The notes below the pieces were generated by a model. That model did not search any database. It was not told the origin of the DNA and worked only from the letters and a program-made list of their open reading frames with translations. A program made the translations under genes and the position numbers. This document shows, piece after piece, positions 27,596-62,189 of a DNA stretch of 64,000 bases (its first letter is position 1; each line of letters starts with the position of its first letter). The stretch spans positions 186,001 to 250,000 of the IMG/VR virus record IMGVR_UViG_3300033153_013547; one strand, written 5' to 3'.

Positions 27596-27934
27596 TCACT
27601 TACATCCCCAAATAAAGTAGATTATATGAATAATTATGGACGATACAGATAGCAAGATTGCCCAATTGGCTTTCCAGATAGCACTTCTACCAAGAAAAAT
27701 GTCTCTCGCATCCTTCAGATCATTTTTCCAGTGTTCCTCGCTTAAACATATTTCTCTACCATAATAAATTGCGCTCGGATCAGCGTAAATTTTAACCCTC
27801 CACCACTTATTTCGTATATCAATAATGGTTTTGTCTGGCAGCATTTTAGAATACAAACTTTCTAAACGCAATCTTTCTTTACTTTCACGGGTAGGCAGAT
27901 CTGACTTACTTTGTCCTATGATCTCATCATTCAT
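27596..27934 (-). CDS. C-terminally membrane-anchored protein (paralogue of 31997-32308)
   Basis: SKERLRLESLYSKMLP...WWRV...CL...WKNDLKDA plus TM tail. Confidence 0.7.
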   Translation of the reverse strand: MNDEIIGQSKSDLPTRESKERLRLESLYSKMLPDKTIIDIRNKWWRVKIYADPSAIYYGREICLSEEHWKNDLKDARDIFLGRSAIWKANWAILLSVSSIIIHIIYFIWGCK

Positions 27935-29357: not shown

Positions 29358-30440
29358 TTACTTCCCAGATTTAGCTCTATTACATGCCTTACATAACATT
29401 TGACAATTTTCAGGAATTGTCTTTCCACCCTTATGCCATGGGGTTATGTGATCTGCTTGCATTTCATCTATCTCAAAATGCTTTTCACATTTTACACAAA
29501 TGCCCTTCTGCCTTTCATATGCTTCCCTCTTCTGTCCTTCTGTAAATGCTCTAATATTTAGGTATTTTTCTTCTCTTGTCAAAACATATGAAAAAATACC
29601 AGACTTCTTGGTCACATCCTCATCTTGCATCAATTCAAATATTTCCTTATCCAACTTAACGGGGTCTATTTGTTTGTCTTTGAATTTATTGTATAAAAGT
29701 CCAAGTGGAACTTTCTTTATTTCCCTACGATAGGTAAGAAAAGTAGTTCTTGTCCAATTTATAACACGTTGGAAATATGTCCATAGATCAAGGGCGTCTG
29801 AATTATGCTGATTACGAGCCATATAATCTTCAATATTTTTATCACTGATCCACTCAATTGCAGTTTCTAAATAATCTTGACGAATTGGAGAACCAGGCAC
29901 ATAATCATGAGCCAAATCATAAGCAGGACAACCAGTCTTACTGAAATATCTTTTTGCATCAGTCAACCAAGGACCAGTGTAAATAGCATTACGAAGTTCT
30001 TGATCTGTCAACTTCTCACCAGCTATATTGATGGTTTTAAACCAGTCTAACTTTTCCTTGTCATTTCCTTCACAAAAATAAATCATCAACTTATAGTCAA
30101 GAATCTGCTCTTTCTCTGTGTCCTCAAGATTGTGAAAATACTGATAATCCAGTGAGAAATTGCCTGCTACATATTCACAAATGCTTATGGTTCTTTGCTG
30201 TCCATCCATAACTTCATAGGAACCATCTGTGTTCTTGACCCAATACATTACATTTAGGGGAAAATCCTTTCTTACTGTTTCAATTACAGCTGCCCTTTGC
30301 TTGTCTTTGTAAATAAATTCTCGTTGATATTTTGGACGAATGTTGAGCTTTCCACCATAACCAATAACACCTTCTTCGTTGTTATTGATGTATTCATTTA
30401 CTACTTCTCTGATAGTAATTTCTTTAAGTTCTATTTTCAT
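29358..30440 (-). CDS. DUF262 (ParB/GmrS-like) plus HNH endonuclease
   Basis: RPKYQREFIY, VMDGQQRT and FKTIN...ELRNA (DUF262); CVKC...ADHITPWHKGG...CKACN (HNH). Confidence 0.9.
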   Translation of the reverse strand: MKIELKEITIREVVNEYINNNEEGVIGYGGKLNIRPKYQREFIYKDKQRAAVIETVRKDFPLNVMYWVKNTDGSYEVMDGQQRTISICEYVAGNFSLDYQYFHNLEDTEKEQILDYKLMIYFCEGNDKEKLDWFKTINIAGEKLTDQELRNAIYTGPWLTDAKRYFSKTGCPAYDLAHDYVPGSPIRQDYLETAIEWISDKNIEDYMARNQHNSDALDLWTYFQRVINWTRTTFLTYRREIKKVPLGLLYNKFKDKQIDPVKLDKEIFELMQDEDVTKKSGIFSYVLTREEKYLNIRAFTEGQKREAYERQKGICVKCEKHFEIDEMQADHITPWHKGGKTIPENCQMLCKACNRAKSGK

Positions 30441-30456
30441 TTATTTATCCTGATAT

Positions 30457-30741
30457 TTATAAAATAACAACTGCATCAAGATGACCTGGTTCAAAATCTT
30501 CAAATGTAACAAAGAAATATTCGTCTTGACCATTATCAGGAGGAGATCTATTAATGATTAGGTAAGTTAGATATCCTGGTCTATATATTGCATACCATTC
30601 TTCGTTTTCGTTTCTATCTTTCTGTGATATTCTTTGTAATGATTTTTTAAACTCAGATTTTAATCTATGTTGTGCATCAATAAATGAATCAATCCCCTTC
30701 AGTAATTTTTCTAATTCACTTTTATGTTTGGCCTGTGTCAT
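30457..30741 (-). CDS. hypothetical protein inserted between MTase and DUF262-HNH
   Basis: ATGA-coupled ORF. Confidence 0.55.
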   Translation of the reverse strand: MTQAKHKSELEKLLKGIDSFIDAQHRLKSEFKKSLQRISQKDRNENEEWYAIYRPGYLTYLIINRSPPDNGQDEYFFVTFEDFEPGHLDAVVIL

Positions 30742-31682
30742 TTCATTCTCCTGTTTTTTATGAAAATTCTACTATACATTCTTTTGCCATTTATATACCC
30801 ACGCCCTTTGGAAATTTCTAAATCATACTCATTTCCCAATATTTCAAACTGCTCAGGATTGTATTTACTTAAAAATGTAATAGGCACACCCATAACACCA
30901 TCATAATCCATGGGTATATTTTTCACTTTATTAACCTCGATAGCATCGTAGTTATCATATTTTGGGTAGACCTCTTCATTTTTATAGTATTTCTTATACA
31001 AAATCAAATCTTCATGTCTTTTGGGATAGTCTAAATTGGTGAACCAACTTATAGCAGGAACCTTCCCATATTTCTTGCCAGTTTTTTCATCAATTCTATT
31101 CCATCTTTCATAATCATCAGATAGTCCAAATTCCATTACTATATTGGAGCTATTGCCCAACCAAATCTTATTTTCCTTGATCAACTTGAAAATTTCTTTG
31201 TAAGTAATAGCATTTTGATTACCAATTATTATAAATTTCTTGTCATATTCTATCAATTGATCAACATATTCCCTAAACAATGAAAAGGGTGGATTGGTGA
31301 CTACAACATCTGCTTCCTTCAATATCTCTATACATTCAGGACTTCTAAAATCACCATTTTGCTTCAAGGGGGTTTTTATGGTGTCCATCTTATTTATCTT
31401 GCCATCATCATTGATGTCAGCAATAAGTTCCAGTTTATATGACGGCTTATCTGTCTCAAAATGGGTGGCAATTAGTTTTTTTAGCCCCAGATGCTCAAAA
31501 TTCAAGGCAAAATAATTCCAGAAATTACTCTCTTCAGGATCATCACAATTGCAGAATATAATTTTACCTTTTAGGTGATCTTTATAGTGCTTCAATTCCC
31601 TTTCTATATCTGCTAATTGCGTATAAAATTCATCATTCTTTGCTTTCTTTGCTTGATGTAAATTTTTATTGGCTGCCATCAC
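30738..31682 (-). CDS. adenine-specific DNA methyltransferase, EcoRI-methylase family
   Basis: AKKAKNDEFYT, CNCDDP, GDFRSPEC, VVTNPPFSLFREY, GVMGVPITF. Confidence 0.9.
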   Translation of the reverse strand: MMAANKNLHQAKKAKNDEFYTQLADIERELKHYKDHLKGKIIFCNCDDPEESNFWNYFALNFEHLGLKKLIATHFETDKPSYKLELIADINDDGKINKMDTIKTPLKQNGDFRSPECIEILKEADVVVTNPPFSLFREYVDQLIEYDKKFIIIGNQNAITYKEIFKLIKENKIWLGNSSNIVMEFGLSDDYERWNRIDEKTGKKYGKVPAISWFTNLDYPKRHEDLILYKKYYKNEEVYPKYDNYDAIEVNKVKNIPMDYDGVMGVPITFLSKYNPEQFEILGNEYDLEISKGRGYINGKRMYSRIFIKNRRMK

Positions 31683-31948
31683 TCATCCCTCATCATACTA
31701 ATATCTTTCAATCTTTCTACTGCCTTCTCATAATATTCCATACTTTCGACAACATGTTTCCATTGAATATAAACAACATCAAGCTGTCCATGTTCATCAA
31801 CAAGTTTTTTGGCTGATTCCAGTACTGCTTGTTCTGTATTTTCTGCTGGAATATCAATAAATTTTAGAAATGTTGTGTCTAATTTCACAACATACCAGCC
31901 ATCCTCTTCTCCGTCCATTTCTGTTATACGATATTTATCTTCGCCCAT
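31679..31948 (-). CDS. chimeric small protein ending in a copy of an MTase C-terminus
   Basis: C-terminal YYEKAVERLKD matches 33605-34378 (YYDKAVERLKD). Confidence 0.6.
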   Translation of the reverse strand: MGEDKYRITEMDGEEDGWYVVKLDTTFLKFIDIPAENTEQAVLESAKKLVDEHGQLDVVYIQWKHVVESMEYYEKAVERLKDISMMRDE

Positions 31949-31996
31949 CTAATCACCTCGGTTATCATTCCACTTTGTCCAGGAATTGTCTTTCCA

Positions 31997-32308
31997 CTAA
32001 ATATAGTATAAGCCAACAATACTTACCACAACAGACGTGATAGACACAACGAGCGCCGTGATACTTATTGCACGATTCCTTTGTCCCTCCCAGTATACCA
32101 TAAAAACCTCTGCAGCGTCCTGAAGATCTTGCTTCCATTTGTCTATGCCCAGACATTTTTCTATGCCCATATTATCTATATATGGATCAATCCTCCACCA
32201 CATATCACCAATGGCTTTTATTTCTTTCAAGGGCATAATTTTGGCATATATTCGTTCGACCCTAGCTTTTTCCTTGCTTCGGTGTATTGACTTGTATTTT
32301 TTGCTCAT
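31997..32308 (-). CDS. C-terminally membrane-anchored protein (paralogue of 27596-27934)
   Basis: SKEKARVERIYAKIMP...WWRI...CL...WKQDLQDA plus TM tail. Confidence 0.7.
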   Translation of the reverse strand: MSKKYKSIHRSKEKARVERIYAKIMPLKEIKAIGDMWWRIDPYIDNMGIEKCLGIDKWKQDLQDAAEVFMVYWEGQRNRAISITALVVSITSVVVSIVGLYYI

Positions 32309-32309
32309 T

Positions 32310-32924
32310 TTACTTTCTTAGTACGAATTTGTCGATACTTCGCTGATACACTTTCCATCGATCAAATATTTTATCTTGATCTGATATCTCGAAGCGAATT
32401 GCGTATTCGTTGTTGGTATTGTTCTTGCCTGATTCCCTTGTGCCATGAGCATAACCAGCCTTAGTTAGATCAAGCTCTTTATGCATTTCATTATTGGTTA
32501 ATAGGAAAGTATAACGAACGAACTCCTCACTTCTTATGTCAAATGCTTCAACAATATAGTCTACTTCCTGCCAAGGTCTGATCTGCACTATGTTTACATT
32601 GGAACCATCGTGCATCAGCAGCGAGCACTTATATTCGAAATGGATACCATTAGCATTTCTACAATCTCCCCTACCATCAGATGCCTTGACTTTCACCAGC
32701 CCGTTTTCTCTTATGAATCTATTTTCTATTCTAGGAGCAAATGCCTGACTACTTAAGAACGACATACCATATATAAAATATTCCCAACTTTCATTGTTTC
32801 CCCAGCTCCTATCTTTGCCAATAGTTGTCTTGATATAGTTCGGTATTTTACTAGCCTCTTTTAATTGTTGCAAAGTTAGCTTGATTTTCTGCAATTCTTT
32901 TGACCGCCTTGTCGTAAAACTCAT
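32310..32924 (-). CDS. putative type II restriction endonuclease
   Basis: PD-(D/E)XK-like GDC...FEYKCS and VQIRPW; overlaps the adjacent MTase gene. Confidence 0.6.
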   Translation of the reverse strand: MSFTTRRSKELQKIKLTLQQLKEASKIPNYIKTTIGKDRSWGNNESWEYFIYGMSFLSSQAFAPRIENRFIRENGLVKVKASDGRGDCRNANGIHFEYKCSLLMHDGSNVNIVQIRPWQEVDYIVEAFDIRSEEFVRYTFLLTNNEMHKELDLTKAGYAHGTRESGKNNTNNEYAIRFEISDQDKIFDRWKVYQRSIDKFVLRK

Positions 32925-33603
32925 TATTAGATTCTATACCAACGAATTGCCTATTCAAATTAGTAGCGGCTACAGCCGTAGTCCCACTACCAATACAATT
33001 ATCTAAAACTAAATCATTTTCATTGGTATATACTTTGATTAAATACTCAAATAACTCAAGTGGTTTTTGGGTAGGATGCCCTCCCTTGATCCTCGGATTA
33101 CTTATTTTGATCACGGACCTGGCATGTCTGAAGCCTTCGTTATTTTTATAGCTTGATTTTTGCTGATTATACATATCACTTTTGTAACCAGCCTTTCGGC
33201 TTATGGAATATGGTGTTCCAATCGTTTTCTGCTCATTATATACTGGTATTTTCGTGTAAAATACCAGTATATTCTCATGCACTCTTAGGGGCTGGTGTTT
33301 TATGTTGAGCTGTCCTGATCCTATAGTCTTTTCCCATATCAACTCATATTTAAATAACTCAATATTACTTGCTATCAATAATGAAGTAAATGGTTGTGAA
33401 GCCGTCAAGACGATGGCCCCGTTGTTCTTGATAATCCTTTTATATTCTTTCCACAATGGCTCAAAAGGTATGATCACATCCCATTTACAGTTGGTCGTTC
33501 CATATGGCAAATCACACAGGATCATATCAATAGATCCGTCTTCAATATGTGGCATTATATCCAAACAATCTCCAAGGTAGATATTATTAGGCTCTATTTT
33601 CAT
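32851..33603 (-). CDS. N4/N6 DNA methyltransferase (beta class)
   Basis: GDCL...DLPYG...HPTQKP...VLDNCIGSGTT. Confidence 0.92.
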   Translation of the reverse strand: MKIEPNNIYLGDCLDIMPHIEDGSIDMILCDLPYGTTNCKWDVIIPFEPLWKEYKRIIKNNGAIVLTASQPFTSLLIASNIELFKYELIWEKTIGSGQLNIKHQPLRVHENILVFYTKIPVYNEQKTIGTPYSISRKAGYKSDMYNQQKSSYKNNEGFRHARSVIKISNPRIKGGHPTQKPLELFEYLIKVYTNENDLVLDNCIGSGTTAVAATNLNRQFVGIESNNEFYDKAVKRIAENQANFATIKRG

Positions 33604-33604
33604 T

Positions 33605-34378
33605 TTACATCAACCCTTCTTCCTTCTCCTTCACATCATCCATTTCTGCATGCCTTCTTACATCTTTCAATCTTTCTACTGCCTTATCATAATATTGTTT
33701 GTCTAATTCACAACCCATAGCATTTCTACCTTGCTGTATTGCAGCTACAAGCATAGTGGCAGATCCACAAAAAGGATCCAAAACAACATCTCCAGCATTA
33801 GAATGTATATCTATAAGCTCATGCATCAATTTCAATGGTTTTTGGGTAGGATGTAATCTCTTGCCCCCATCTCTATGTATTGGCTGACTAAAAACACCAT
33901 TATGATATTTTGCATGAAATGTAGGTTTTGATCCCTTTGTGGCTACAATAGCAACTTCACGAGCATTTGTCAAATAAGATACCTTAGAATTTATAGGCAC
34001 AGGAATTGTCTTGATCCATTCAATGAAACGAAGCATTTTGAACTTTTTGCTCTTCAGCAGACAAGCCAGGGATTCTAATTTCCATAGATCATAGAACACA
34101 ATGATAGTGCCCCCTTTTCTTAGCACACGATAACATTCTCCAAAAACATTGTCAAATAAACTAGCATGATCTTCTGCAGCAATCTTGTCCCACTTACCAA
34201 AATCCATAGATATTCTTAGACGCTCAACTCCCTTGTCACCCATAGCCTGAAACCCTGTTTTCTTTGATATTTGATAAGGTGGATCAGTAAGCACAAGATC
34301 AATAGAATTATCATCTATTTCCTTGAGAAAGTCCTGGGCATCTCTATTTTCAAAAACAAGATTAGGCTTTATCTCCAT
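33605..34378 (-). CDS. N4/N6 DNA methyltransferase (beta class)
   Basis: DPPY, HPTQKP, VLDPFCGSAT. Confidence 0.92.
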   Translation of the reverse strand: MEIKPNLVFENRDAQDFLKEIDDNSIDLVLTDPPYQISKKTGFQAMGDKGVERLRISMDFGKWDKIAAEDHASLFDNVFGECYRVLRKGGTIIVFYDLWKLESLACLLKSKKFKMLRFIEWIKTIPVPINSKVSYLTNAREVAIVATKGSKPTFHAKYHNGVFSQPIHRDGGKRLHPTQKPLKLMHELIDIHSNAGDVVLDPFCGSATMLVAAIQQGRNAMGCELDKQYYDKAVERLKDVRRHAEMDDVKEKEEGLM

Positions 34379-35026
34379 CTACACCAGTTCCTCTTTCACA
34401 ACATCTAAAAGATTGTTGTATATTATGCCCAATCCATTATGGAATTCTTTATCTAATTTGTTGCCTATATCCAGATAGTTTTTATTACTAACAGAATGTA
34501 ATCCACTGAAATAATTATAGCCATCATTGGGTATTGATGTGGTTATTTGATCGCCACTACTACGAAGGTTGGGTATATCCTCCCTCGATATCACGGCAAA
34601 CCCTATATCCATTGTTCCCTTGCGATTGTTGCCTCTTTGTATAGTCATTAGATAGTCAAACTCTAAATCATGTACATCTGGATCTTGACTATTATTACCC
34701 AATTTATTCTTGATCACTATTGACTTTGCAGTTGTGAGTCGATTGGGAGATTTTTTGAGCGGTTGTTGAAACATATATGTCTGGATTTTGACAGAGATTC
34801 TATCTTTATTATTGTACATTAAATCATATCCAACATTGTACGATGATTCCAAAACATTCTTACCAACATAAGGCTTAACAATAGTATAACACAACAAATG
34901 ACTAATATGAAATCTATAATCGGGCTTATTCATTTCTGGCGGTATTCCTCTAGACGCCATCTCAATAGATTTTAATATATTGTTATGTTCCAATCGACAA
35001 AATCGTATAAAACTGCATCCAAACAC
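34379..35026 (-). CDS. putative restriction endonuclease (divergent PD-(D/E)XK)
   Basis: GYDLMY...ISVK motif; lies between two MTase genes. Confidence 0.45.
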   Translation of the reverse strand: MFGCSFIRFCRLEHNNILKSIEMASRGIPPEMNKPDYRFHISHLLCYTIVKPYVGKNVLESSYNVGYDLMYNNKDRISVKIQTYMFQQPLKKSPNRLTTAKSIVIKNKLGNNSQDPDVHDLEFDYLMTIQRGNNRKGTMDIGFAVISREDIPNLRSSGDQITTSIPNDGYNYFSGLHSVSNKNYLDIGNKLDKEFHNGLGIIYNNLLDVVKEELV

Positions 35027-36009
35027 TACTTACTTCCTTTACAATACTTGTCTATAATATTTTTGATTGAGAATTTTCCTCTTCCGTATTTCTGTTGCAA
35101 GAATAAATTCACTTCGCCCTGTCCTAAACCTTTGTCTAACAACGATTTATAATCATTACGGATCGAGGCAATTTCTCCTTCTTCTATCTTTTTGCCCTGA
35201 TTTTTGGGCACAACATTTACCACTTTTTTCATGTTATCAAGATCACAACCAAATTTTATCTCTCCCAATTTACTAATATGATGATCAAAAATACTCTTAT
35301 TAATCTCATATCCCACTATCTTTCTGCCCAATTTGATAGCATTATATGCTGTAGTAAAATTACCCATAAAAAAATCACACACCATATCCCCAGCATTGGA
35401 TGAATATAAAATCATTTTTCTAACCAATTCATTTGGTAGTTTGTTTTGGTTTTTTGGTATTTTGGGATCATATTCTTTATTAATAATAAAGACATCTTCT
35501 AGATCCTGATATAACAATGACTTACCTGTGGAGGTCTTTTCTTGTGATCCAAATCTACAATAGGTATTGAAAATATTTTTGCTTTTTATGCTTTTGCTAT
35601 AATATAAAATATGATAATGTGAAGTTACATATTTCTTTTTTGTATACACACCAAAATTATATTTCCAGATAATATGATTAATCTCATGTAACTTTAGGGC
35701 ATAAGCTGCATTTAACACATGCCTCAAATTACTATGTCCCATGATAATATACATTGACCCATTTGGTTTCAATATTCTGGATGCTTCTGTCATCCACTCA
35801 TGCGTCCATTTCCCGTAATCTGCAGGGGCTTCGACATAACCATCTATGATATTAGACGAATCTCTTTTATAGTGTTTATCAAATGATATCTCATCAATGC
35901 CAAATGGTGGATCATATATCCCTAAATCAACATGATTATCTGGGATATCTGCTCTGCTGCTCATACAATCAGCATTAAATATCTGAATTTTGGGTTTTCT
36001 TTCTCTCAT
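35026..36009 (-). CDS. N4/N6 DNA methyltransferase (beta class) with C-terminal extension
   Basis: DPPF, NQNKLP, VCDFFMGNFTT. Confidence 0.88.
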   Translation of the reverse strand: MRERKPKIQIFNADCMSSRADIPDNHVDLGIYDPPFGIDEISFDKHYKRDSSNIIDGYVEAPADYGKWTHEWMTEASRILKPNGSMYIIMGHSNLRHVLNAAYALKLHEINHIIWKYNFGVYTKKKYVTSHYHILYYSKSIKSKNIFNTYCRFGSQEKTSTGKSLLYQDLEDVFIINKEYDPKIPKNQNKLPNELVRKMILYSSNAGDMVCDFFMGNFTTAYNAIKLGRKIVGYEINKSIFDHHISKLGEIKFGCDLDNMKKVVNVVPKNQGKKIEEGEIASIRNDYKSLLDKGLGQGEVNLFLQQKYGRGKFSIKNIIDKYCKGSK

Positions 36010-36043: not shown

Positions 36044-36367
36044 CTACTCTTCCTCATAATACTCAAGAAGTTCTTGAATAAGATTAGCTTTCTCTATGCT
36101 TTTTGTATAACCTGCTCGTATTCTAGCATGGTGTTGCCTTTTCACAGAATCCTTCGTTTCTTCTGGTTCCTGACATTCCTTGGTCTCTTCACCATAAATC
36201 TTGATAGACTGTGGCTGATATTGTGGATCACTATGTTGCGCACAATAAACCAAACAAGCCAAATCAGACAAGTCTTCTAATTTCTGAAGAGCTTCTCTCT
36301 TTGTCTGTGCCTCAACCATTACTTCTGCATCAATAATCCATTCAACAGGAATGATAAATTGTTTCAT
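36044..36367 (-). CDS. DpnD/PcfM-like small protein
   Basis: F.IPVEW...VMVEAQTKREALQKL. Confidence 0.6.
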   Translation of the reverse strand: MKQFIIPVEWIIDAEVMVEAQTKREALQKLEDLSDLACLVYCAQHSDPQYQPQSIKIYGEETKECQEPEETKDSVKRQHHARIRAGYTKSIEKANLIQELLEYYEEE

Positions 36368-36576
36368 TATAACTCCTCCACAAAATCTTCCATTTCCTCT
36401 ATAGAATCTTCATCAACATGAAACGAGTCATCTACATACCAAGCATCTCCTCCACTTTCAACACATTCTCTAGTAGACATTTTCCATGCTAATTCTAGTG
36501 CCTCTTTCTCTGTTTCAGCTTTAACATATACATCAACACCTACTCTCCATGTAACGAAGATGGCAAACTCTTTCAT
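36367..36576 (-). CDS. DpnD/PcfM-like small protein
   Basis: FAIFVTW...VYVKAETEKEALELA. Confidence 0.6.
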   Translation of the reverse strand: MKEFAIFVTWRVGVDVYVKAETEKEALELAWKMSTRECVESGGDAWYVDDSFHVDEDSIEEMEDFVEEL

Positions 36577-47253: not shown

Positions 47254-47701
47254 AATAATTATCCTTTTCCATCCAGTAATAAATGCTGGACCAACTGGTA
47301 ACTAACCAGTCTCTATCAAGGTTATATTTTAGTCTATTTAGCACCACACTGAAACTTCCAAATCCTATGATCATGCCAGGCTTTAGCCTTTTATTGCCAC
47401 ATGAGTAGACTATTCCTTCATAACAGTCATTATTTCCAAACTTATAAGCCAATGTGTGTATTACTACATGAGATTTTGTCATAGGAACAGAATATTCTAC
47501 ATCCACCGTGCCATTATCCAATACTTTTAGCGTTTCTTTATCAACAGAGGAATCCTCAGGCAAAACTGATACCATATCTGATTCTTCTCTAAACAGTTTC
47601 TGCCTCTCACGTGTTAGCAAAGGAATAACTATTATGTTATCTCCAAAAGCCTTGATCTCACCAAAATTTTTTATGATCAGTTTTTTATTCTTCATCTTCA
47701 T
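47243..47701 (-). CDS. divergent GroES-like protein with long insertion (copy 3)
   Basis: IKAFGDNIIVIPL...YEGIVYSCG...LKPGMIIGF...WLVTSWSSI, reminiscent of T4 gp31-type co-chaperonins; start uncertain (ORF open to 47794). Confidence 0.5.
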   Translation of the reverse strand: MKMKNKKLIIKNFGEIKAFGDNIIVIPLLTRERQKLFREESDMVSVLPEDSSVDKETLKVLDNGTVDVEYSVPMTKSHVVIHTLAYKFGNNDCYEGIVYSCGNKRLKPGMIIGFGSFSVVLNRLKYNLDRDWLVTSWSSIYYWMEKDNYYAS

Positions 47702-48266
47702 TCCAGGGCACAAAATCCGCAGGATTGTCACGACGGTTCCATGCTCTTGCAGCTTCCATAGATGTCTTATGACAACCATTGGTACACAAACCACAATCCA
47801 TACATTCTATCCATGCGAAGGCAACCCCTTCCACATCTCTATCTGTGGACATTATTCTTTGTGAACCACAACAAGGGCATTGTTTTATAACAGCAGGCAA
47901 ATCTACTTCTACAGGTTCAGGGCAAAAACACTCAATCAACTTAGAATCAGCTTGATCTAATATTTTCCCAAAATTATCGCCCGAGAAAGAGATTCTAAAT
48001 GCTCTGCCGCTAGCGTCTTTAGCAATTCTATAACTCTTGTTTTTGTCATAATAAAGATTGATTGTTGCATTAATCACAGCATCAGTAGGATACATAACCC
48101 TCAAAGTAGCATACCAATGATCAGATAACATTTTACGATAACGAAGGAGATGGTGAGTAGGAAATGGATCACCCTCATTAACAAACTTCATCCATCTTTC
48201 AGATTTTATTTTCTCCTTACTAAAGGTAAGGGAAAATTCATCCATTCTATCTGTCCAAATCTTCAT
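47685..48266 (-). CDS. protein with C-terminal Lar-like (restriction alleviation) zinc ribbon
   Basis: KQCPCCGS...WIECMDCG...EAARAWNRR. Confidence 0.65.
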   Translation of the reverse strand: MKIWTDRMDEFSLTFSKEKIKSERWMKFVNEGDPFPTHHLLRYRKMLSDHWYATLRVMYPTDAVINATINLYYDKNKSYRIAKDASGRAFRISFSGDNFGKILDQADSKLIECFCPEPVEVDLPAVIKQCPCCGSQRIMSTDRDVEGVAFAWIECMDCGLCTNGCHKTSMEAARAWNRRDNPADFVPWNEDEE

Positions 48267-51048: not shown

Positions 51049-51300
51049 TTAATGTTGCAATGTAGCAATAACACTCACTATATGATCGAATTTTACATAA
51101 TAATATCGATCAATAACCGTAGGTTTGGTGACATCAAACATCGATCCACAGATATCTCTTCTGTCTTTCATTTGATGAACCAATTCTTCTACTTCATGAG
51201 AAGATATGTTCTCTAAATCTATTACATGTAACTCCCCATGAATTTCCACTTTTATTTCAACATCATAGAAATCATCATCTCTAAAATTCAGTTCTTTCAT
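51049..51300 (-). CDS. hypothetical protein
   Basis: ATGA coupling to the DnaE-C stop. Confidence 0.6.
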   Translation of the reverse strand: MKELNFRDDDFYDVEIKVEIHGELHVIDLENISSHEVEELVHQMKDRRDICGSMFDVTKPTVIDRYYYVKFDHIVSVIATLQH

Positions 51301-52391
51301 GATGGTTCTTTTACCTCCAACTGTTCCAACTCAAACACTTTCTTAATTACTATTGTGCCTCTATTACTTACCTTTCCCTCAATACACACAGGATTATTAT
51401 TAACCAGTAATCCCAGTGAGGCAATATCTTTCTCATCATCTTCATCATAAAAATATATGCATGGTAGATGAGTTATCCCGTCAGAAATTTCAAACACAAG
51501 GTAAGGGGTTCCTTTTCTGCTAATAAATGATCTTCTTGAAGAAACAAGACCAACATACTGCCCCTGAACCTTGCCTATTTGTCTTGATTCCGTAGGATTA
51601 TGAGCTCCTGCAGGTATATTATAAGCATCTAAAATGCCACCAGAAATATACACTCCCAAGATCTCAAACTCCATGGAACTTAATTCAGCCTTACTAAACT
51701 CCCCTATGATTACAAGTTCATCTATATCTAGATCAAGAGGTAATGGCTCACGTGATTCTGCCTTTTTATTCTTTAGCCTTGCTTTATTCTTAGCATTCCA
51801 TTCATGTATTTTTCTATAAGCATATAAGAGAGCTTTACGTGTCAGCACAACATCACTATTATCTAACAGAGGTATACCATCAAACGCACCTATTTTGATT
51901 AGATTAATCATTCCATCTTTACGTGCTGTGCCCCTAACTACAATATCCTGCACAGATTTATATGGTCCATTGTCTTCTCTGTTTTTTACAATGACACTGG
52001 CTGAATTTAGCCCCACCTTCCTTACAGAAGTCAGCCCAAACATAATATGTCTAACTTTGTCATCGTCTTCATATGGTGTAAACATAGTACCAGAAATGTT
52101 GATCCTTGGTGGTGAGAGCTTTATTTTCAATTGTTTACACTCCTTCATGAAATCCCTAAGAGTATTCTCAAGATCATCTCCACTTTTAGACTCAATAGCA
52201 TCAATCATAGATGCAGCAATAAAAATATGTGGCCAGTATGTTTTTACATAGGCAGTATGATAGGTCAAGATAGCATAAGATACTGAATGACTGTTCTGAC
52301 TAACCAAAAATTGTTTAGCCCTTTCATCTGTTACTAGATAATTGTGAGGAGGACCATCAAGTGAAAGACTTATAAAGGCTTTTTTATTCAT
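51297..52391 (-). CDS. dnaE: DNA polymerase III alpha, C-terminal piece with N-terminal split intein half (IntC)
   Basis: IntC ...PHNYLV...FLVSQN followed by extein SHSVSYAILTYHTAYVKTYWP; PPRINIS; HhH FGLTSVRKVG; LIKIGAFD; EFEILGVYISG; OB fold. Alternative TTG start at 52418. Confidence 0.92.
   Translation of the reverse strand: MNKKAFISLSLDGPPHNYLVTDERAKQFLVSQNSHSVSYAILTYHTAYVKTYWPHIFIAASMIDAIESKSGDDLENTLRDFMKECKQLKIKLSPPRINISGTMFTPYEDDDKVRHIMFGLTSVRKVGLNSASVIVKNREDNGPYKSVQDIVVRGTARKDGMINLIKIGAFDGIPLLDNSDVVLTRKALLYAYRKIHEWNAKNKARLKNKKAESREPLPLDLDIDELVIIGEFSKAELSSMEFEILGVYISGGILDAYNIPAGAHNPTESRQIGKVQGQYVGLVSSRRSFISRKGTPYLVFEISDGITHLPCIYFYDEDDEKDIASLGLLVNNNPVCIEGKVSNRGTIVIKKVFELEQLEVKEPS
52293..52391 (-). 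mobile_element. split intein C-half (IntC, ~33 aa)
   Basis: Block F-like FISLSLDGPPHNYLV and block G LVSQN/S. Confidence 0.85.
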
Positions 52392-52875
52392 ACCTTGTTC
52401 CCATCCATCTACAGACAATTAATCCAGAATTGATCTTTTCATAATTCACACAAATATCCAAAAACTGATCAACAGTAGCAATAGCACTATCAGTTCCTGC
52501 TGTTTTTAGTGCTCTTGCAAATATTTGCCTATTTTTATCCTGATCTATTACACCACGAATATTCTCCATTACATTCCACTTTTGAGCCATTTGTCTAATA
52601 CAAGTCCAGTGAGTCATCAATATAGGATCCTTGTTGATATTACGTCCATATCCACGAATTGTGGGTAGTTCAGAGGCACCAGCCTGCTTAAATACTTTTG
52701 ACATACTACGTATTATGCTTGATCCCTTACAATAAAAATAATCAGTTCCTGGTAACTCATCACGTTTAACTACAATAGCTGTTGTTGATCTCATCCTTGT
52801 ATCTTTAGGTAATTTGATCAAATAGTAATTATTACCACATATACTAACTTTGCCAATTATATTGTTATCCATCAA
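52384..52875 (-). CDS. hypothetical protein between the two split-intein halves
   Basis: AAAGGA RBS; overlaps the IntN stop and the IntC start; no recognisable endonuclease motif. Confidence 0.7.
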   Translation of the reverse strand: MMDNNIIGKVSICGNNYYLIKLPKDTRMRSTTAIVVKRDELPGTDYFYCKGSSIIRSMSKVFKQAGASELPTIRGYGRNINKDPILMTHWTCIRQMAQKWNVMENIRGVIDQDKNRQIFARALKTAGTDSAIATVDQFLDICVNYEKINSGLIVCRWMGTRYE

Positions 52876-54541
52876 TTAATAGTCCTTTATTATCTATTAC
52901 AACTAGACAATTACACTCATTTGGCATTTTATACCCATCTTCATTGAGGAAGTAATGATCTCTTGTGCATTCTATTTCAACATTTTCATTGCCTACTTTA
53001 ACTATTGGTTCATCAAAAGCAAAAGTTACTGCTCTCACAGTATTAGTTATTATTCCACCATTGCCCACATAAGAATAAATAGTATCTCCAAAGTTCAACT
53101 GATCTATTCTTACAAGACCACTTGGTGTCAAAACCAAAGTATCTTCACTCAGACACTTATTGAAACCATAATTTCCAAAACCTTCTATCTGTTCCCATAG
53201 TTTGGTAGCTTCTTCTAACGTCCAGCCTGAATGACGGACACAACCATCAATAAATTTTGGCTTAGCCTGAGCAAGCTTAGAGGACAACTTTTTACCAACA
53301 ATTCTTCTTAGGTTATCCCCCTCATTAGGACTAAACCCAGCAATTTTCTGAGCTATTTCTATAATACTTTCTTGGTATATGATAAGACTAGAAGTTTTTT
53401 CCAATATAGGTTTCAGATCATCATGCAAATATTCTGGCTTTGTCCTTCCATGCCTAAGAGAAAGGTATTTTTCTTCAAATCCTGCTGACATAGGTCCAGG
53501 TCTGTGTAGAGCTATAACATCTGAAATATCTTCTATGCTAGTAGGCATACATTTCTGCATAGTTTTCCTGATCCCCACAGATTTCATTTGAAATAACCCA
53601 GCATACAAGCCTTTTTGCATAAATTCAAAAACCTTAGGATCATTCATGGGAATATCATCAATAGTCATACTATTTTCAATGTATCCCATGCTATGAGCCA
53701 TATTCAAAGTGTTTTGTATAACTGACAATGTGCCAAGACCTAAAAAATCTATTTTACATAAGCCTGCTAACCCTGCAGACTTCATATCTAGTTGCACAAC
53801 ATTGTTACCACTAGCATCTACATACATAGGCACAATTGACTGCAATGGCTCATTAGATATTATGATCCCAGCAGCATGCAATCCAGTCTGTCTATAATTT
53901 TGCCTGAGGGAATTAAATATAGCAATAAATTCATCTATGTCCTCAAGACAATTTTCACCCAAAGTCTGCTTGCTTACCTCAACAATTTTAGCAACATACT
54001 GCCTTAGTTCTTCATGAATAAATATTTCATCAGTCCCTATCCAGTCTCCAGTGCTCATATCTACATTAGTAGCAGGCAAATACATTTTAGATATCAAGCC
54101 AACAGATGCTTCTTCACTGCTTCCACATATACATCTAACTATGTCTCTAAAAGCAGACTTAGGTTTGTATTCTGCATAAGTGCCTATGCTGGCAAAATAT
54201 TTGTTACCATATTTACTTCTGACAGCATCTTTCACTCTGTCTCTACCATACTTGTCAAAATCTATGTCAAAATCTGGTTGCTCTCTTTTGACAACAAGAC
54301 CAAACTCTCCATCAGGTTTTTTGCTTGTGATCCCAAGAGCATATGCTAACAATGAATTAGTCTTGTTCTTGTTGCCTGCTCCACAATCACAAGCCTTATT
54401 GATCATATAAATCATATGATCATCAACATGATAGAATTCATATAAATCAAGTTCGTTAGAGATCCTGTCCATCTCTTCTTTACTAAACTTTTTCTCCCAT
54501 CGTTCAGTCTGCTGGTGACAAAAATCCCTTAGTTGGCTCAT
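52865..54541 (-). CDS. dnaE: DNA polymerase III alpha, catalytic middle piece with C-terminal split intein half (IntN)
   Basis: PDFDIDF, GLHAAGIII, KIDFLGL, GLFQM, LHRPGPM, IYQE, LRRIVGKK, YGFNK then CLSEDT intein. Confidence 0.93.
   Translation of the reverse strand: MSQLRDFCHQQTERWEKKFSKEEMDRISNELDLYEFYHVDDHMIYMINKACDCGAGNKNKTNSLLAYALGITSKKPDGEFGLVVKREQPDFDIDFDKYGRDRVKDAVRSKYGNKYFASIGTYAEYKPKSAFRDIVRCICGSSEEASVGLISKMYLPATNVDMSTGDWIGTDEIFIHEELRQYVAKIVEVSKQTLGENCLEDIDEFIAIFNSLRQNYRQTGLHAAGIIISNEPLQSIVPMYVDASGNNVVQLDMKSAGLAGLCKIDFLGLGTLSVIQNTLNMAHSMGYIENSMTIDDIPMNDPKVFEFMQKGLYAGLFQMKSVGIRKTMQKCMPTSIEDISDVIALHRPGPMSAGFEEKYLSLRHGRTKPEYLHDDLKPILEKTSSLIIYQESIIEIAQKIAGFSPNEGDNLRRIVGKKLSSKLAQAKPKFIDGCVRHSGWTLEEATKLWEQIEGFGNYGFNKCLSEDTLVLTPSGLVRIDQLNFGDTIYSYVGNGGIITNTVRAVTFAFDEPIVKVGNENVEIECTRDHYFLNEDGYKMPNECNCLVVIDNKGLLIDG
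52868..53155 (-). mobile_element. split intein N-half (IntN, 96 aa)
   Basis: Block A CLSEDTLVLTPSG and block B IECTRDHYF; the ORF stops with no C-terminal blocks. Confidence 0.9.
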
Positions 54542-54599
54542 ATCCTCTCCACTATATTTCTTTTGTCTCAGTAGCTTCTTTGTCTAATGGTTCTCTCAT

Positions 54600-54917
54600 T
54601 CAGTCTGCTTCTTTGTCAAACAACTGGGGCATCATGGATTCTAACATATCTGTTACATCATCTAACCTTTCCTTTAGTATATCAATCTTTTCTTCCAGTG
54701 CTTCAAGCTTCTGACTCATGTCTTCTGTATAGATCACATGGGTTGGAGCAGGAGGATAACCACCATCAGGATAAGGTAAGGGAGTACCAATAAATGAGTC
54801 AGGAATTAGTGGATCCTGCTTCCATGTATAATCAGTTGTTCCACTATCTGTGATTTCTATCCAATTGTGATCATTGGTGCGGTAAATTCCATGCATACTA
54901 TTATCATCACTAAACAT
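54600..54917 (-). CDS. hypothetical protein with coiled-coil C-terminus (paralogue of 55539-55910)
   Basis: KLEALEEKIDILKERLDDVTDMLESMMPQLFDKEAD. Confidence 0.65.
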   Translation of the reverse strand: MFSDDNSMHGIYRTNDHNWIEITDSGTTDYTWKQDPLIPDSFIGTPLPYPDGGYPPAPTHVIYTEDMSQKLEALEEKIDILKERLDDVTDMLESMMPQLFDKEAD

Positions 54918-54925
54918 TTACACTC

Positions 54926-55564
54926 TCACTTCCTTTGGTAATTGTGCGCCAATAATTGTATATCATCACTATGACGCAAACCTACTTTCTCTAACCTCTC
55001 TGCCTCGCGTTTTATTACATACAAACACAATGACGGCTTAGCAAGTAACATTCGCTTTGTTGCAGTAAAGGCATAATCATTACAATAACCATAATAACCA
55101 CCCTTACACAAATTATCTAATTTGTGGGCATAACGTTTGCCTGCAGAGGTAAGATCTAGTCTATAGGTGAATTTTTCATTCCACTCTAACATTTGAAAGG
55201 GAAATTCTGCCACATAATGACTTTCTATGTATGCCCTATATGGATCAAGTAAATAAGCATGTCGACCTGCATTTATTCTGGTAGTCTTGATCATCCCAAA
55301 TGCCACTAAATAATTTATTGCTTCAAATAGTTGCTTACTACATGCACCATACTTTGTCATAATAAAATCATTTTTCAGATTTATTTTATTATGCCTATGT
55401 CCTAGTATACCTATACCAGGATGCATGTAAAGACACAGATAAGTCATGTCATCAAGACCCAGCACAGGTTTACTATTGTTATAAAACAGTATTCTAACAA
55501 CATAATCACGTATACCAAGGTCTAGAGGTTGCCATGTATTACCATTCATGAGCACTATCCTCAT
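54926..55564 (-). CDS. winged-helix protein, YwgA/Panacea(SocA)-like
   Basis: YGACSKQLFEAINYLVAFGMI...LDLTSAGK pattern. Confidence 0.4.
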   Translation of the reverse strand: MRIVLMNGNTWQPLDLGIRDYVVRILFYNNSKPVLGLDDMTYLCLYMHPGIGILGHRHNKINLKNDFIMTKYGACSKQLFEAINYLVAFGMIKTTRINAGRHAYLLDPYRAYIESHYVAEFPFQMLEWNEKFTYRLDLTSAGKRYAHKLDNLCKGGYYGYCNDYAFTATKRMLLAKPSLCLYVIKREAERLEKVGLRHSDDIQLLAHNYQRK

Positions 55565-55910
55565 CTAACGATTTTCTCATCCAATCTGCTTCCTTATCAG
55601 ACAATTTTGGCATCGCAGATTCTAGCATATCTATTATGTCTTCTAACTTATCTTTTAGTATGCCAATATCTTCTTGCAATTTATCAATCTTTTCTGCCAT
55701 GGATAGAGGCATAGCATATGATAACATGTTGGACATCATTGCCTGTGTATCTATTGCAACATCATTGTTGGGATCATTAAGAACACGTAAATCATCAATA
55801 TGATAATCACCCTGCACTCTATTTACGTCTGCTACCAATCTTGCTCTTGCTGGCTCTGACAACGATGACCAATCAAAAGATTGCAGAATTTCACCATCGT
55901 AATATACCAC
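55539..55910 (-). CDS. hypothetical protein with coiled-coil C-terminus (paralogue of 54600-54917)
   Basis: KIDKLQEDIGILKDKLEDIIDMLESAMPKLSDKEADW. Confidence 0.65.
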   Translation of the reverse strand: MVYYDGEILQSFDWSSLSEPARARLVADVNRVQGDYHIDDLRVLNDPNNDVAIDTQAMMSNMLSYAMPLSMAEKIDKLQEDIGILKDKLEDIIDMLESAMPKLSDKEADWMRKSLDEDSAHEW

Positions 55911-59992: not shown

Positions 59993-61177
59993 CTATAATC
60001 CAGCAGCAAATCCTGTTTTCTCATGATCAACAGGATCACCACGTAATCCCACGCTCAGTTCAATAGCTCTTGTAATCACTTCATCTACTAAACCAAGTTC
60101 TTTCAACTTTATAGCTAGCCTACCCTCACCCTGTTCCTTAACTTCTGTTCCATCAAGAGATTTATAATTATACCATGAACCAGATCTTGTAATTAGTCCC
60201 TCTATCTTCCCTGCCTGGATTACTCCATGCAAATTGTCAAATCCTGGTTCATGAAAACCATAAAATTGACTCTTACTATCAGCTATATTGACTTGTTTCA
60301 CCCAAAATCTTGTGGCCACAGGTTCATTACCAAATGGAGAACCATATTTATTCTTCATTACACGAACATTGATTTCATAGGCATATGCCTCTTTGATCTT
60401 GTTCTTGTCAATATCATTAGCAGTTATACATGGCTTGGTATATTTATAGAGATCTATTCTCTGCTGAGCATAATATGGCAAAGCCCTTCCTCCACCACCA
60501 ATCTTAGTCTTAGCCCCAGGCATTGTAGCCATTGTTGCTCTATACTGATTGGTGATCAAAAGAGTGCATTCATTAGGTGAAAGTAACCTAGGAATCCTCC
60601 TAAAAAAAACAGAATTTAGCTTAGGTTTGGTGTCCCTGATTCGAGCATCTATATTCATCTGCCCATCACTCTTACCTCTGATTTTGTCAATAGTATCTGC
60701 TGTTTGCATAGTATCCATAGAATCTATGATCACTAACCCAAACAAACCAGTAGCTACTGCTTCATTTATGAAATTGTAGATCTCCTCAGCACTTTCAATG
60801 CTAGACATATTATCTACAACAAAGAGCTTATTACTCTTAGTATCACCCTCATAGTTGCCACCTAGTGCATTATACCATGAAGGATCTAAGGATTGTTCTA
60901 GATCAAAAAACAACACTGATCTATCATAATTCTTGATCATGCTTATAGCTGATACAATACACAAGGCTGTTTTGCCACTATGTTCATCACCCAGTATTTC
61001 AACTGTCTTACCAACACCCCATCCTCCATGCAACATATAATCCACTGCAGAAGAACCTGTGGCATAAAACTTCTTTTCCATAACCTTATCTGTTTTGAGA
61101 GGAATGTTGAACTTGGCTCTCAGATCATTGAGAATTTGGGAGGCAGGAGTGACTTTACTAACTTCTTTCTTACTCAT
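59993..61177 (-). CDS. recA: RecA/UvsX recombinase
   Basis: ATGS..VDYML.GG, GDEHSGKT, FFDLEQ, IIDS, TNQYR, GGRALPYYA, KNK, SGSWY, QGE. Confidence 0.92.
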   Translation of the reverse strand: MSKKEVSKVTPASQILNDLRAKFNIPLKTDKVMEKKFYATGSSAVDYMLHGGWGVGKTVEILGDEHSGKTALCIVSAISMIKNYDRSVLFFDLEQSLDPSWYNALGGNYEGDTKSNKLFVVDNMSSIESAEEIYNFINEAVATGLFGLVIIDSMDTMQTADTIDKIRGKSDGQMNIDARIRDTKPKLNSVFFRRIPRLLSPNECTLLITNQYRATMATMPGAKTKIGGGGRALPYYAQQRIDLYKYTKPCITANDIDKNKIKEAYAYEINVRVMKNKYGSPFGNEPVATRFWVKQVNIADSKSQFYGFHEPGFDNLHGVIQAGKIEGLITRSGSWYNYKSLDGTEVKEQGEGRLAIKLKELGLVDEVITRAIELSVGLRGDPVDHEKTGFAAGL

Positions 61178-61878: not shown

Positions 61879-62189
61879 ATATTTTCCTCTCCCTCAACAA
61901 CGATACTATCTATCGTTGAGAATGCATTATAAACCTTTTCTGCTGCAGATTGTATCTTGGCATTATCAATAACAGACATATCTTCTATTACTAGCAACAA
62001 ATCATAAGAAGTAAGCATAAGAGACTTTAGGAACTCTATGGCTGTGTGATTATCATTACACATACACCCAAACCCTGTTAGCAGCTTTCTAACAGTATCA
62101 CCAAATAATACTGGATCCTCACATTCATCAAAAATTTGGATCAGTGTAGCCATAAACACTCTTGATATTTCTGTAAGGTCATTAGACAT
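61875..62189 (-). CDS. hypothetical protein
   Basis: Coupled ORF. Confidence 0.55.
   Translation of the reverse strand: MSNDLTEISRVFMATLIQIFDECEDPVLFGDTVRKLLTGFGCMCNDNHTAIEFLKSLMLTSYDLLLVIEDMSVIDNAKIQSAAEKVYNAFSTIDSIVVEGEENI

What the first reader, a model, noticed from the sequence alone, without database searches (positions are those of the whole stretch)
31703..33696. Restriction-modification cassette bracketed by a 35-bp in-frame direct repeat
Seen: 34/35-identical repeats 1959 bp apart enclose an MTase, a putative REase, a TM protein and most of an 89-aa ORF. Recombination between them would give the 33605-34378 MTase the tail YYxKAVERLKDISMMRDE, coupled by ATGA to the EcoRI-family MTase. 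Inference: a recently integrated, excisable or amplifiable RM module that lets the phage switch methylation pattern, plausibly through its own Rad52-like/RecA proteins.
Basis: partly seen in the sequence, partly recalled or inferred. Interest (0 to 1): 0.6.

Follow-up and report, generated by a model that had tools for sequence, protein, structure and literature searches.

The report
Recombination scar flanking a phage restriction-modification operon
A jumbo phage carries a real 35-40 bp duplication of the end of a DNA methylase gene on both sides of a 2-kb block holding a genuine restriction-modification gene pair; it looks like the scar of how the block arrived, as known from bacteria, and nothing shows it working as a switch.

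Summary
Positions 31703-31737 and 33662-33696 are 34/35 identical, or 37/40 over 31698-31737 and 33657-33696. They lie 1959 bp (653 codons) apart and have sharp edges. They are the only two copies in the 261-kb phage genome, and a second sample's assembly supports both.

Both copies encode the conserved C-terminal helix (YYxKAVERLKD) of PF01555 methyltransferases. The copy at the end of the 89-aa ORF is therefore methylase-derived, and that ORF is a chimera.

The enclosed MTase (M_B250) and the 204-aa ORF (R204) are a genuine type II RM pair. R204 belongs to a family with no Pfam model and 609 cluster representatives, with an invariant D...ExK motif. In five other contigs its homologs overlap the 3' end of an upstream PF01555 MTase; in the four with DNA that MTase is 57-64% identical to M_B250.

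The gene junction is TGATG or GTGA, not ATGA.

No empty-site allele, excision junction or read data could be found. Composition is not foreign, and the longest uninterrupted identity is 24 bp. "Switch" remains conjecture.

The parts
31698..31737 (-). Repeat copy 1. It encodes YYEKAVERLKDI, the C-terminal part of orf89. The next 6 codons (SMMRDE) carry the ribosome-binding site of the EcoRI-family MTase.
33657..33696 (-). Repeat copy 2. It encodes YYDKAVERLKDV, the conserved C-terminal helix of M_A257. The next 17 codons form a purine-rich tail lying just upstream of the M_B250 start.
33605..34378 (-). M_A257, a PF01555 N6/N4 DNA methyltransferase. Its nearest relatives (64-67% identity) are followed by an IceA/NlaIII-like REase, which this phage lacks. 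Its tail after the conserved 'RL' is unusually long (20 aa).
32851..33603 (-). M_B250, a PF01555 methyltransferase and the M subunit of the enclosed RM operon. It is 57-64% identical to MTases that precede R204 homologs in other contigs.
32310..32924 (-). R204, a putative type II restriction endonuclease of a PD-(D/E)xK family without a Pfam model. D87, E97 and K99 are invariant. JGI calls its start at 32894.
31997..32308 (-). TM103, a small protein with a C-terminal hydrophobic helix. It is 40% identical to a paralog at 27596-27934 in the same phage. Function unknown.
31679..31948 (-). orf89, a chimeric ORF. Its N-terminal 70 codons are an ORFan and its last 19 codons derive from an MTase 3' end. 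A GAGGTGA ribosome-binding site lies upstream.
30738..31682 (-). EcoRI-family adenine MTase (PF13651, E 1e-126). Its start overlaps the orf89 stop.
29358..30440 (-). GmrSD_N(DUF262)-HNH nuclease, matching PADLOC 'REase_II' at E 7e-142. It lies downstream of an EcoRI-family MTase in 52 of 80 viral loci (directly after it or within about 2 kb; upstream in L021).
34379..35026 (-). orf215, with no family match. The language-model search gives only leads, to viral 'restriction endonuclease'-named clusters. It is a possible R partner of M_C327 or M_A257.
35026..36009 (-). M_C327, the third PF01555 methyltransferase of the island.
59993..61177 (-). UvsX/RecA-like recombinase, the phage's own homologous-recombination enzyme.

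Best explanation
The two repeats are a passive recombination scar.

A stretch of 35-40 bp from the 3' end of the M_A257 methyltransferase gene, coding its conserved C-terminal helix, was duplicated. This happened when a block of about 1.9 kb came to lie between M_A257 and the EcoRI-family methyltransferase. The block holds a complete type II RM operon (M_B250 then R204), a small membrane-protein gene, and the 5' 70 codons of an ORFan.

There are two possible routes:
(b) One unequal, illegitimate crossover between two closely related phage genomes, one of which had M_A257 directly followed by the EcoRI-family gene.

The event gave M_A257 a new, long tail that lies just upstream of the M_B250 start. 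It also fused the ORFan to the old MTase tail, producing orf89.

What is shown: the repeat, its MTase origin, the chimeric nature of orf89, and that the enclosed pair is a conserved RM operon.

What is inferred: the direction (insertion rather than deletion), the route, and that the repeats can now support only rare, incidental deletion or tandem duplication through the phage's UvsX-like recombinase or replication slippage.
For: - The repeat is real, unique in the genome, sharp-edged and in frame. It is present in two independent assemblies.
- The motif is native to the MTase family. In M_A257 plus its 119 homologs (120 sequences), the YYxKAxxRL columns are Y 105, Y/F 104, K 83, R 117 and L/I 109 of 120. 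One homolog carries YYDKAVERLEK.
- orf89 has no homolog or paralog. Its only outside match is the tail of another phage PF01555 MTase.
- The two window copies are 34/35 identical. Independent MTase tails coding the same motif are 27/33 and about 22/33 identical at DNA level. The copies therefore share descent rather than converging.
- After the conserved 'RL', homolog tails have a median of 8 aa and only 3% reach 20 aa. The present tail is 20 aa and the recombinant tail would be 9 aa.
- Each tail sequence contains the ribosome-binding region of the gene that follows it.
- M_B250 plus R204 is a mobile unit found elsewhere. A PF01555 MTase directly precedes an R204 homolog, overlapping it by 4-14 nt where genes were called, in L093, L096, L097, L100 and a JGI contig; in the four with DNA it is 57-64% identical to M_B250.
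- The structure meets the three sequence criteria of Furuta et al. 2010 (PMC2853133): R and M genes inside, an insert under 20 kb, and a duplication over 30 bp. That paper also reports gene fusions created by such insertions.
Against: - No empty-site genome was found, so the direction of the event is not shown.
- The block is not compositionally distinct: GC is 0.373 against 0.381, and GC3 is within the genome's range.
- TM103 has a paralog in the same phage. The donor, if there was one, was therefore a related phage, or the event was intragenomic.
- The tail-length argument is statistical and weak.
Confidence: 0.6

Rival explanations
1. This is an active, excisable or amplifiable RM cassette. 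The 35-bp repeats serve as recombination sites. The 1959-bp block pops out as a circle or is lost or duplicated at a biologically relevant rate, which changes the phage's methylation and restriction repertoire.
For: - A simulated crossover leaves every gene intact. It gives a 246-aa M_A257 whose stop overlaps the EcoRI-family MTase start, and a 1959-bp circle with four complete ORFs of 250, 204, 103 and 100 aa.
- The phage has a UvsX/RecA-like recombinase.
- T4-like phages form mini-circles between short repeated cassettes at about 1 in 1e5 virions (PMC2839356).
Against: - The longest uninterrupted identity is only 24 bp. From my own recollection of Shen and Huang 1986, that is at the lower limit for RecA-type recombination.
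- No variant allele was found. The M_A257 cluster at 90% identity has one member, and both sibling-sample contigs show the filled junctions.
- There are only two copies of the repeat in the genome.
- Homologous M-R204 modules in L096, L097 and L100 have no flanking repeats.
- The block holds no integrase or transposase.
- No read data could be obtained.
Confidence: 0.15
2. This is a deletion scar rather than an insertion scar. The tail of orf89 is the last remnant of a second M_A257-like methyltransferase gene that once sat upstream of the EcoRI-family MTase. An internal deletion fused an upstream ORF to its last 19 codons.
For: - It yields the same present-day structure.
- The phage stacks many MTase genes: four PF01555 plus one EcoRI-family. 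A former extra copy is therefore conceivable.
- The in-frame fusion has a 1-in-3 prior.
Against: - It needs a second copy that is 97% identical over just these 35-40 nt yet unrelated immediately downstream. That requires an additional recombination boundary.
- No other trace of a degraded MTase lies between 31.7 and 32.0 kb.
Confidence: 0.15
3. The repeat is an assembly artefact or chimeric join.
For: The source is a metagenome assembly, and short repeats can mis-join contigs.
Against: - Each copy, with both of its flanks, is reproduced at 99.7-100% identity in contigs assembled from a different sample.
- At 40 bp the repeat is shorter than typical reads and large assembly k-mers.
Confidence: 0.02
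4. The match arises by chance, or by convergent coding of a conserved protein motif.
For: Both copies encode a motif that is conserved in PF01555 enzymes.
Against: - None of 100 shuffles gives a match.
- Other MTase tails encoding the same motif share only about 67-82% DNA identity, against 97% here.
- orf89 is not an MTase.
Confidence: 0.01

Closest known systems
RM gene insertion with long target duplication (Nobusato et al. 2000; Furuta, Abe and Kobayashi 2010, PMC2853133)
   Same: An R gene plus an M gene, with no integrase or transposase, sits in a short insert flanked by direct repeats longer than 30 bp (46 bp in the Haemophilus influenzae cases). The repeat occurs nowhere else in the genome. 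The insertion can create fused methyltransferase ORFs.
   Different: - The host replicon is a jumbo phage, not a bacterial chromosome.
- The duplicated target is the in-frame 3' end of another methyltransferase gene.
- The block also carries two non-RM small genes.
- The defining empty-site comparison could not be made.
PeSL cassettes and mini-circles of T4-type phages (Arbiol et al. 2010, PMC2839356)
   Same: Short direct repeats in a large lytic-type phage bracket accessory genes. Recombination between them deletes or inserts the genes and can release small circles, using only the phage's general recombination machinery.
   Different: - PeSLs are intergenic promoter-plus-terminator modules present in many copies.
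- Here the repeat is coding sequence, has two copies, and shows no promoter or terminator signal above background.
- A multi-copy intergenic repeat family does exist in this genome, but at 74-82.5 kb, outside the window.
Type II RM operons with a beta-class PF01555 MTase followed by an overlapping small PD-(D/E)xK REase
   Same: M_B250 followed by R204 has the same order, orientation and overlapping stop and start as the homologous pairs in L093, L096, L097 and L100.
   Different: - The R family has no Pfam, PHROG, NCBIfam or PADLOC model.
- Only weak hits to the Cap4 and Eco15I nuclease cores were found.
- Its specificity and activity are unknown.

Membership tests
[quoted passage not shown] | Both R and M gene homologs lie inside the inserted segment | tested here: met
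   M_B250 matches PF01555 at 4.9e-31. R204 has invariant D87/E97/K99 across 50 homologs. Homologs overlap the 3' end of an upstream PF01555 MTase in 5 other contigs; where DNA was held it is 57-64% identical to M_B250.
[quoted passage not shown] | Insert shorter than 20 kb and flanking direct repeat longer than 30 bp | tested here: met
   The period is 1959 bp. The repeat is 35 bp at 34/35, or 40 bp at 37/40.
[quoted passage not shown] | A related genome shows the empty site, with the repeat sequence in single copy and the flanks contiguous | tested here: inconclusive
   No relative of this phage was retrievable. None of 80 loci with an EcoRI-family MTase has a PF01555 tail directly upstream.
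[quoted passage not shown] | No other mobility gene (integrase, transposase) in the unit | tested here: met
   Pfam, PHROGs, PADLOC and NCBIfam scans of the four ORFs show none.
PeSL-type mobile regulatory cassette | The repeat is an intergenic early promoter plus stem-loop terminator | tested here: not met
   Both copies lie inside ORFs. Promoter and terminator scans are at background level: 43 found against 39.5 expected, and 2 against 3.7.
PeSL-type mobile regulatory cassette | Many copies scattered through hyperplastic regions | tested here: not met
   There are only two copies in 261 kb.
PeSL-type mobile regulatory cassette | Circular excision products are detectable | not testable with these tools
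   No sequencing run was listed. This needs inverse PCR or read mapping.
Site-specific (integrase/att or integron) cassette | A tyrosine or serine recombinase is associated with the unit | tested here: not met
   No recombinase domain was found in 29.3-36.0 kb.
Type II restriction endonuclease, PD-(D/E)xK superfamily (R204) | A catalytic D...(D/E)xK motif is conserved across the family | tested here: met
   GD87-x9-E97-x-K99 is invariant in alignments A2 (50 sequences) and A3. There are weak hits to the Cap4 and Eco15I nuclease cores.
Type II restriction endonuclease, PD-(D/E)xK superfamily (R204) | The PD-(D/E)xK fold | tested here: inconclusive
   The AlphaFold2 model has mean pLDDT 42, which is too poor for a fold search. 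The predicted helix and strand order is compatible with the fold.
Type II restriction endonuclease, PD-(D/E)xK superfamily (R204) | Sequence-specific cleavage that is blocked by the cognate methylation | not testable with these tools
   This needs expression and a cleavage assay.

The most novel reading that the evidence does not exclude
The 1959-bp block is a self-contained, homology-guided RM mini-cassette. Once excised, all four of its ORFs are intact. It carries the conserved 3' coding sequence of PF01555 methyltransferases as a portable attachment site. That would let it enter the end of a resident methylase gene in a co-infecting related phage without inactivating the gene, and leave again. 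It would be a way for jumbo phages to trade restriction systems.
Probability: 0.08. Interest if true: 0.7.

Novelty: new member of a known kind. Interest (0 to 1): 0.35.

Why it matters
The case shows, in a phage genome, the same repeat-flanked signature by which RM systems are thought to spread in bacteria. Here the event remodelled two genes: it gave one methylase a new tail and created a chimeric ORF. That is a concrete example of how phage methylase and nuclease islands are built.

If junction reads were found, it would be a simple, testable model of RM gene flux between large phages.

As a by-product, R204 defines a sizeable PD-(D/E)xK nuclease family (609 cluster representatives) that has no Pfam model and is repeatedly paired with one MTase lineage. 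It is worth an enzymatic test.

Tried and rejected
**Read evidence**
- The look-up of sequencing runs listed no run, so read laying was never used. The decisive junction and coverage test could not be done.

**Searches for relatives or empty-site alleles (all blank)**
- Megablast and tblastn against cultured phages.
- Protein-guided scans of viral contigs with M_A257, orf190, the TM103 paralog, orf215 and orf89.
- Exact scans for the repeat core in viral and metagenome contigs.
- A degenerate scan for the coding sequence of ...ERLKDISMMRDE plus the MTase start in metagenome contigs.
L006, which carries copy 2, was indeed not returned. These blanks therefore say little about the same phage population.

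**Contexts of other loci**
- The 80 viral loci with an EcoRI-family MTase share only the MTase and nuclease modules with this phage.
- None has a PF01555 tail directly upstream.

**Structure**
- AlphaFold2 models of R204 and orf215 were too poor to use (pLDDT 42 and 32). No fold search was run.
- Protein-atlas hits to Bsp6I, PvuII, ThaI and 'restriction endonuclease' clusters are leads only.

**Composition**
- GC and GC3 do not mark the block as foreign.

**Length limits of the word search**
- The word search for orf89 and R204 sees only proteins of 0.55-1.75 times the query length.
- For R204 the exhaustive search filled that gap.
- For orf89 it did not, so longer or shorter relatives are not excluded.

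**Other points**
- One alignment-guided scan failed for lack of a conserved block. It was repeated with fewer sequences.
Full report
**Source**

The window is bases 186001-250000 of a 261,124-bp IMG/VR virus record (JGI sample 3300033153), a jumbo phage. The genes of the region all lie on the minus strand.

**1.

- The repeat finder reports 31698-31737 against 33657-33696 at 37/40, 1959 bp apart. The 35-nt core differs at one base.
- None of 100 dinucleotide-preserving shuffles gave a match.
- A search of the whole genome at up to 6 mismatches found only these two copies.
- A genome-wide seed-and-extend scan shows it is the only repeat of 28 nt or more in the methylase island.
- In register, similarity stops abruptly on both sides.
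- The spacing is 653 codons. Both copies are read in frame, as YYEKAVERLKDI at the end of orf89 (31679-31948) and YYDKAVERLKDV near the end of the 257-aa methyltransferase M_A257 (33605-34378).
- Two contigs from another sample (3300033148) reproduce each copy with both of its flanks. L006 is 100% identical over window 35743-33268. L008 is 99.7% identical over 32806-26900, its only difference being an 18-nt indel at 30541-30558. The repeat is therefore not an assembly artefact.

**2. What the repeat is made of**

- M_A257 is a PF01555 enzyme (E 3.5e-39).
- In M_A257 plus its 119 homologs (120 sequences), the repeated stretch is the family's conserved C-terminal helix. The columns are Y 105, Y/F 104, K 83, R 117 and L/I 109 of 120. 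One homolog even reads YYDKAVERLEK.
- orf89 matches no family. It has no homolog in the word-indexed protein search, within the limit of 0.55-1.75 times its length. It has no paralog in its own genome and no tblastn match in cultured phages.
- Its only outside match covers residues 62-82. That match is the tail of another jumbo-phage PF01555 MTase, reading ...EYYEKAVERVKD....
- At DNA level that tail is 27/33 identical to the repeat, and the M_B250 tail is about 22/33 identical. The two window copies are 34/35 identical.
- The sequence was therefore copied from an MTase gene into orf89. orf89 is a chimera of a 70-codon ORFan head and a 19-codon MTase-derived tail.

**3. What is enclosed**

- M_B250 (32851-33603) is a second PF01555 MTase, only 25% identical to M_A257.
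- R204 (32310-32924) has no model in Pfam, PHROGs, PADLOC or NCBIfam. Three libraries and the PDB give weak hits to the PD-(D/E)xK core of Cap4.
- The exhaustive profile search found 609 cluster representatives at E up to 1e-3, mostly 180-210 aa.
- In a 50-sequence alignment D87, E97 and K99 are invariant, giving GD-x9-ExK. The profile's only PDB hit is the Eco15I restriction endonuclease, and it is weak (E 0.69). No member carries a relevant Pfam domain.
- Gene context supports the assignment. In L093, L096, L097 (a 50-kb viral contig) and L100 (a 394-kb viral contig) an R204 homolog lies directly downstream of an MTase 57-64% identical to M_B250. In a JGI contig without DNA the upstream gene is a 244-aa PF01555 MTase. 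Where genes were called, start and stop overlap by 4-14 nt.
- In other contigs the nuclease stands alone, once beside an IS240 transposase.
- M_B250 followed by R204 is therefore a genuine, recurrent type II RM operon.
- AlphaFold2 models of R204 and orf215 were too poor for a fold search (pLDDT 42 and 32). Atlas hits to Bsp6I, PvuII and ThaI-like clusters are leads only.
- The block also holds TM103. This protein is 40% identical to a paralog at 27596-27934 in the same phage.
- The homologous RM modules elsewhere contain no TM103 or orf89 relative and have no flanking repeats.

**4. The surroundings**

The block sits in an island of methylases and nucleases. In minus-strand order the genes are:
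- M_C327 (PF01555)
- orf215 (unknown, possibly a nuclease)
- M_A257
- M_B250
- R204
- TM103
- orf89
- an EcoRI-family MTase (PF13651, E 1e-126)
- orf94
- a GmrSD_N-HNH nuclease matching a PADLOC 'REase_II' model end to end (E 7e-142)

The last pair co-occurs in 52 of 80 viral loci. A fourth PF01555 gene spans the record ends. The nearest relatives of M_A257 are followed by an IceA/NlaIII-like REase, which this genome lacks. The phage encodes a UvsX/RecA-like recombinase at 59993-61177 and a weak Erf-like candidate at 62182-62979.

**5. How it most likely arose and works**

A crossover simulated inside the 24-nt identical core removes exactly 1959 bp.
- It leaves a 246-aa M_A257 ending ...YYDKAVERLKDISMMRDE. 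Its TGA overlaps the ATG of the EcoRI-family gene. The sequence there is GTGATG, not ATGA.
- The reciprocal product is a circle carrying four intact ORFs of 250, 204, 103 and 100 aa.

Each tail downstream of a repeat copy contains the purine-rich ribosome-binding region of the next gene. Each tail therefore belongs with its downstream gene.

Homologs of M_A257 end a median of 8 aa after the conserved 'RL', and only 3% have 20 aa or more. The present tail has 20 aa and the recombinant tail would have 9. This favours, weakly, an ancestral state in which M_A257 was directly followed by the EcoRI-family gene.

[quoted passage not shown] That paper reports 46-bp examples and describes gene fusions formed in this way (PMC2853133).

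One unequal, illegitimate crossover between two related phages would give the same picture. I therefore read the repeat as a recombination scar (confidence 0.6). The direction and route of the event are inferred, not shown.

**6. Why I do not accept the 'switch'**

- No run was listed for a read test.
- No deletion allele exists in the protein collection. The 90% identity cluster of M_A257 has one member.
- The sibling sample shows the filled junctions.
- All searches for relatives were blank.
- The block's GC (0.373) equals the genome's (0.381), and its GC3 is within range. That fact and the TM103 paralog argue against a recent foreign import.
- Uninterrupted identity is only 24 bp. Deletion or duplication through the UvsX-like recombinase or by slippage should therefore be rare. 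For comparison, PeSL mini-circles occur at about 1e-5 per virion (PMC2839356).
- The repeat is not a PeSL-type element. It is coding sequence, has two copies, and carries no promoter or terminator signal above background.

**7. Verdict**

This is a real and neat structure, and a new member of a known kind. It shows the RM-insertion signature in a jumbo phage, with a chimeric ORF as a by-product. Mobility is possible but unshown. Interest is 0.35. The most novel reading not excluded is a homology-guided RM mini-cassette that targets methylase 3' ends, with a probability of about 0.08.

Noticed in passing
window 29358-31682: An EcoRI-family MTase and a GmrSD_N(DUF262)-HNH nuclease form a conserved module. 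They co-occur in 52 of 80 viral loci, almost always in this order, adjacent or within about 2 kb. The nuclease matches a PADLOC 'REase_II' model end to end (E 7e-142). The phage may therefore carry a second complete RM system next to the one in the finding.
   Followed up: partly
window 32310-32924: R204 defines a PD-(D/E)xK nuclease family with 609 cluster representatives. It has no Pfam, PHROG, NCBIfam or PADLOC model. In several contigs it is paired with one PF01555 MTase lineage, and elsewhere it stands alone.
   Followed up: yes
window 33605-34378: The closest homologs of M_A257 (64-67% identity) are each followed by a PF05315 IceA/NlaIII-like REase. This suggests CATG specificity. The phage has no IceA gene, so M_A257 looks like an orphan, protective methylase.
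   Followed up: partly
window 27596-27934 and 31997-32308: Two paralogous small proteins with a C-terminal hydrophobic helix share 40% identity over 73 aa. One lies inside the bracketed block and the other about 4 kb away. No homologs were found elsewhere.
   Followed up: partly
window 36044-36576: orf107 and orf69 are tandem paralogs (jackhmmer E 1e-20 to 3e-22). Both are small acidic proteins of unknown function.
   Followed up: no
genome 74,200-82,500 (outside the window; G000:C1): A dense family of 40-120-nt intergenic direct repeats at 90-100% identity contains a stem-loop (CCCCAAAGCACAACTCTTTGGGG) followed by a conserved block. It is reminiscent of the PeSL promoter/terminator cassettes of T4-like phages. 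The region also has raised GC (0.42-0.47).
   Followed up: no
genome 1-348 and 260753-261121 (outside the window): A further PF01555 MTase gene runs across the ends of the record, and the terminal repeat is only 114 bp. The 'direct terminal repeat' is therefore probably the overlap of a circular or permuted assembly rather than a physical genome end.
   Followed up: no
window 51297-57142: The DNA polymerase III alpha homolog is split over at least three ORFs. They cover the PHP domain plus the start of the NTPase domain (55910-57142), the NTPase and finger domains (52865-54541), and HHH_6 (51297-52418). Unassigned ORFs lie between them. This may reflect split genes or inserted mobile elements.
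   Followed up: no
window 30541-30558: There is an 18-nt in-frame indel in orf94 between the window and the sibling-sample contig L008. It is the only difference over 5.9 kb.
   Followed up: yes
window 47685-48266: A 193-aa ORF has a PHROG hit to a Lar-like restriction alleviation protein (E 1.4e-7). This would add an anti-restriction function to a phage that already carries five MTases.
   Followed up: no
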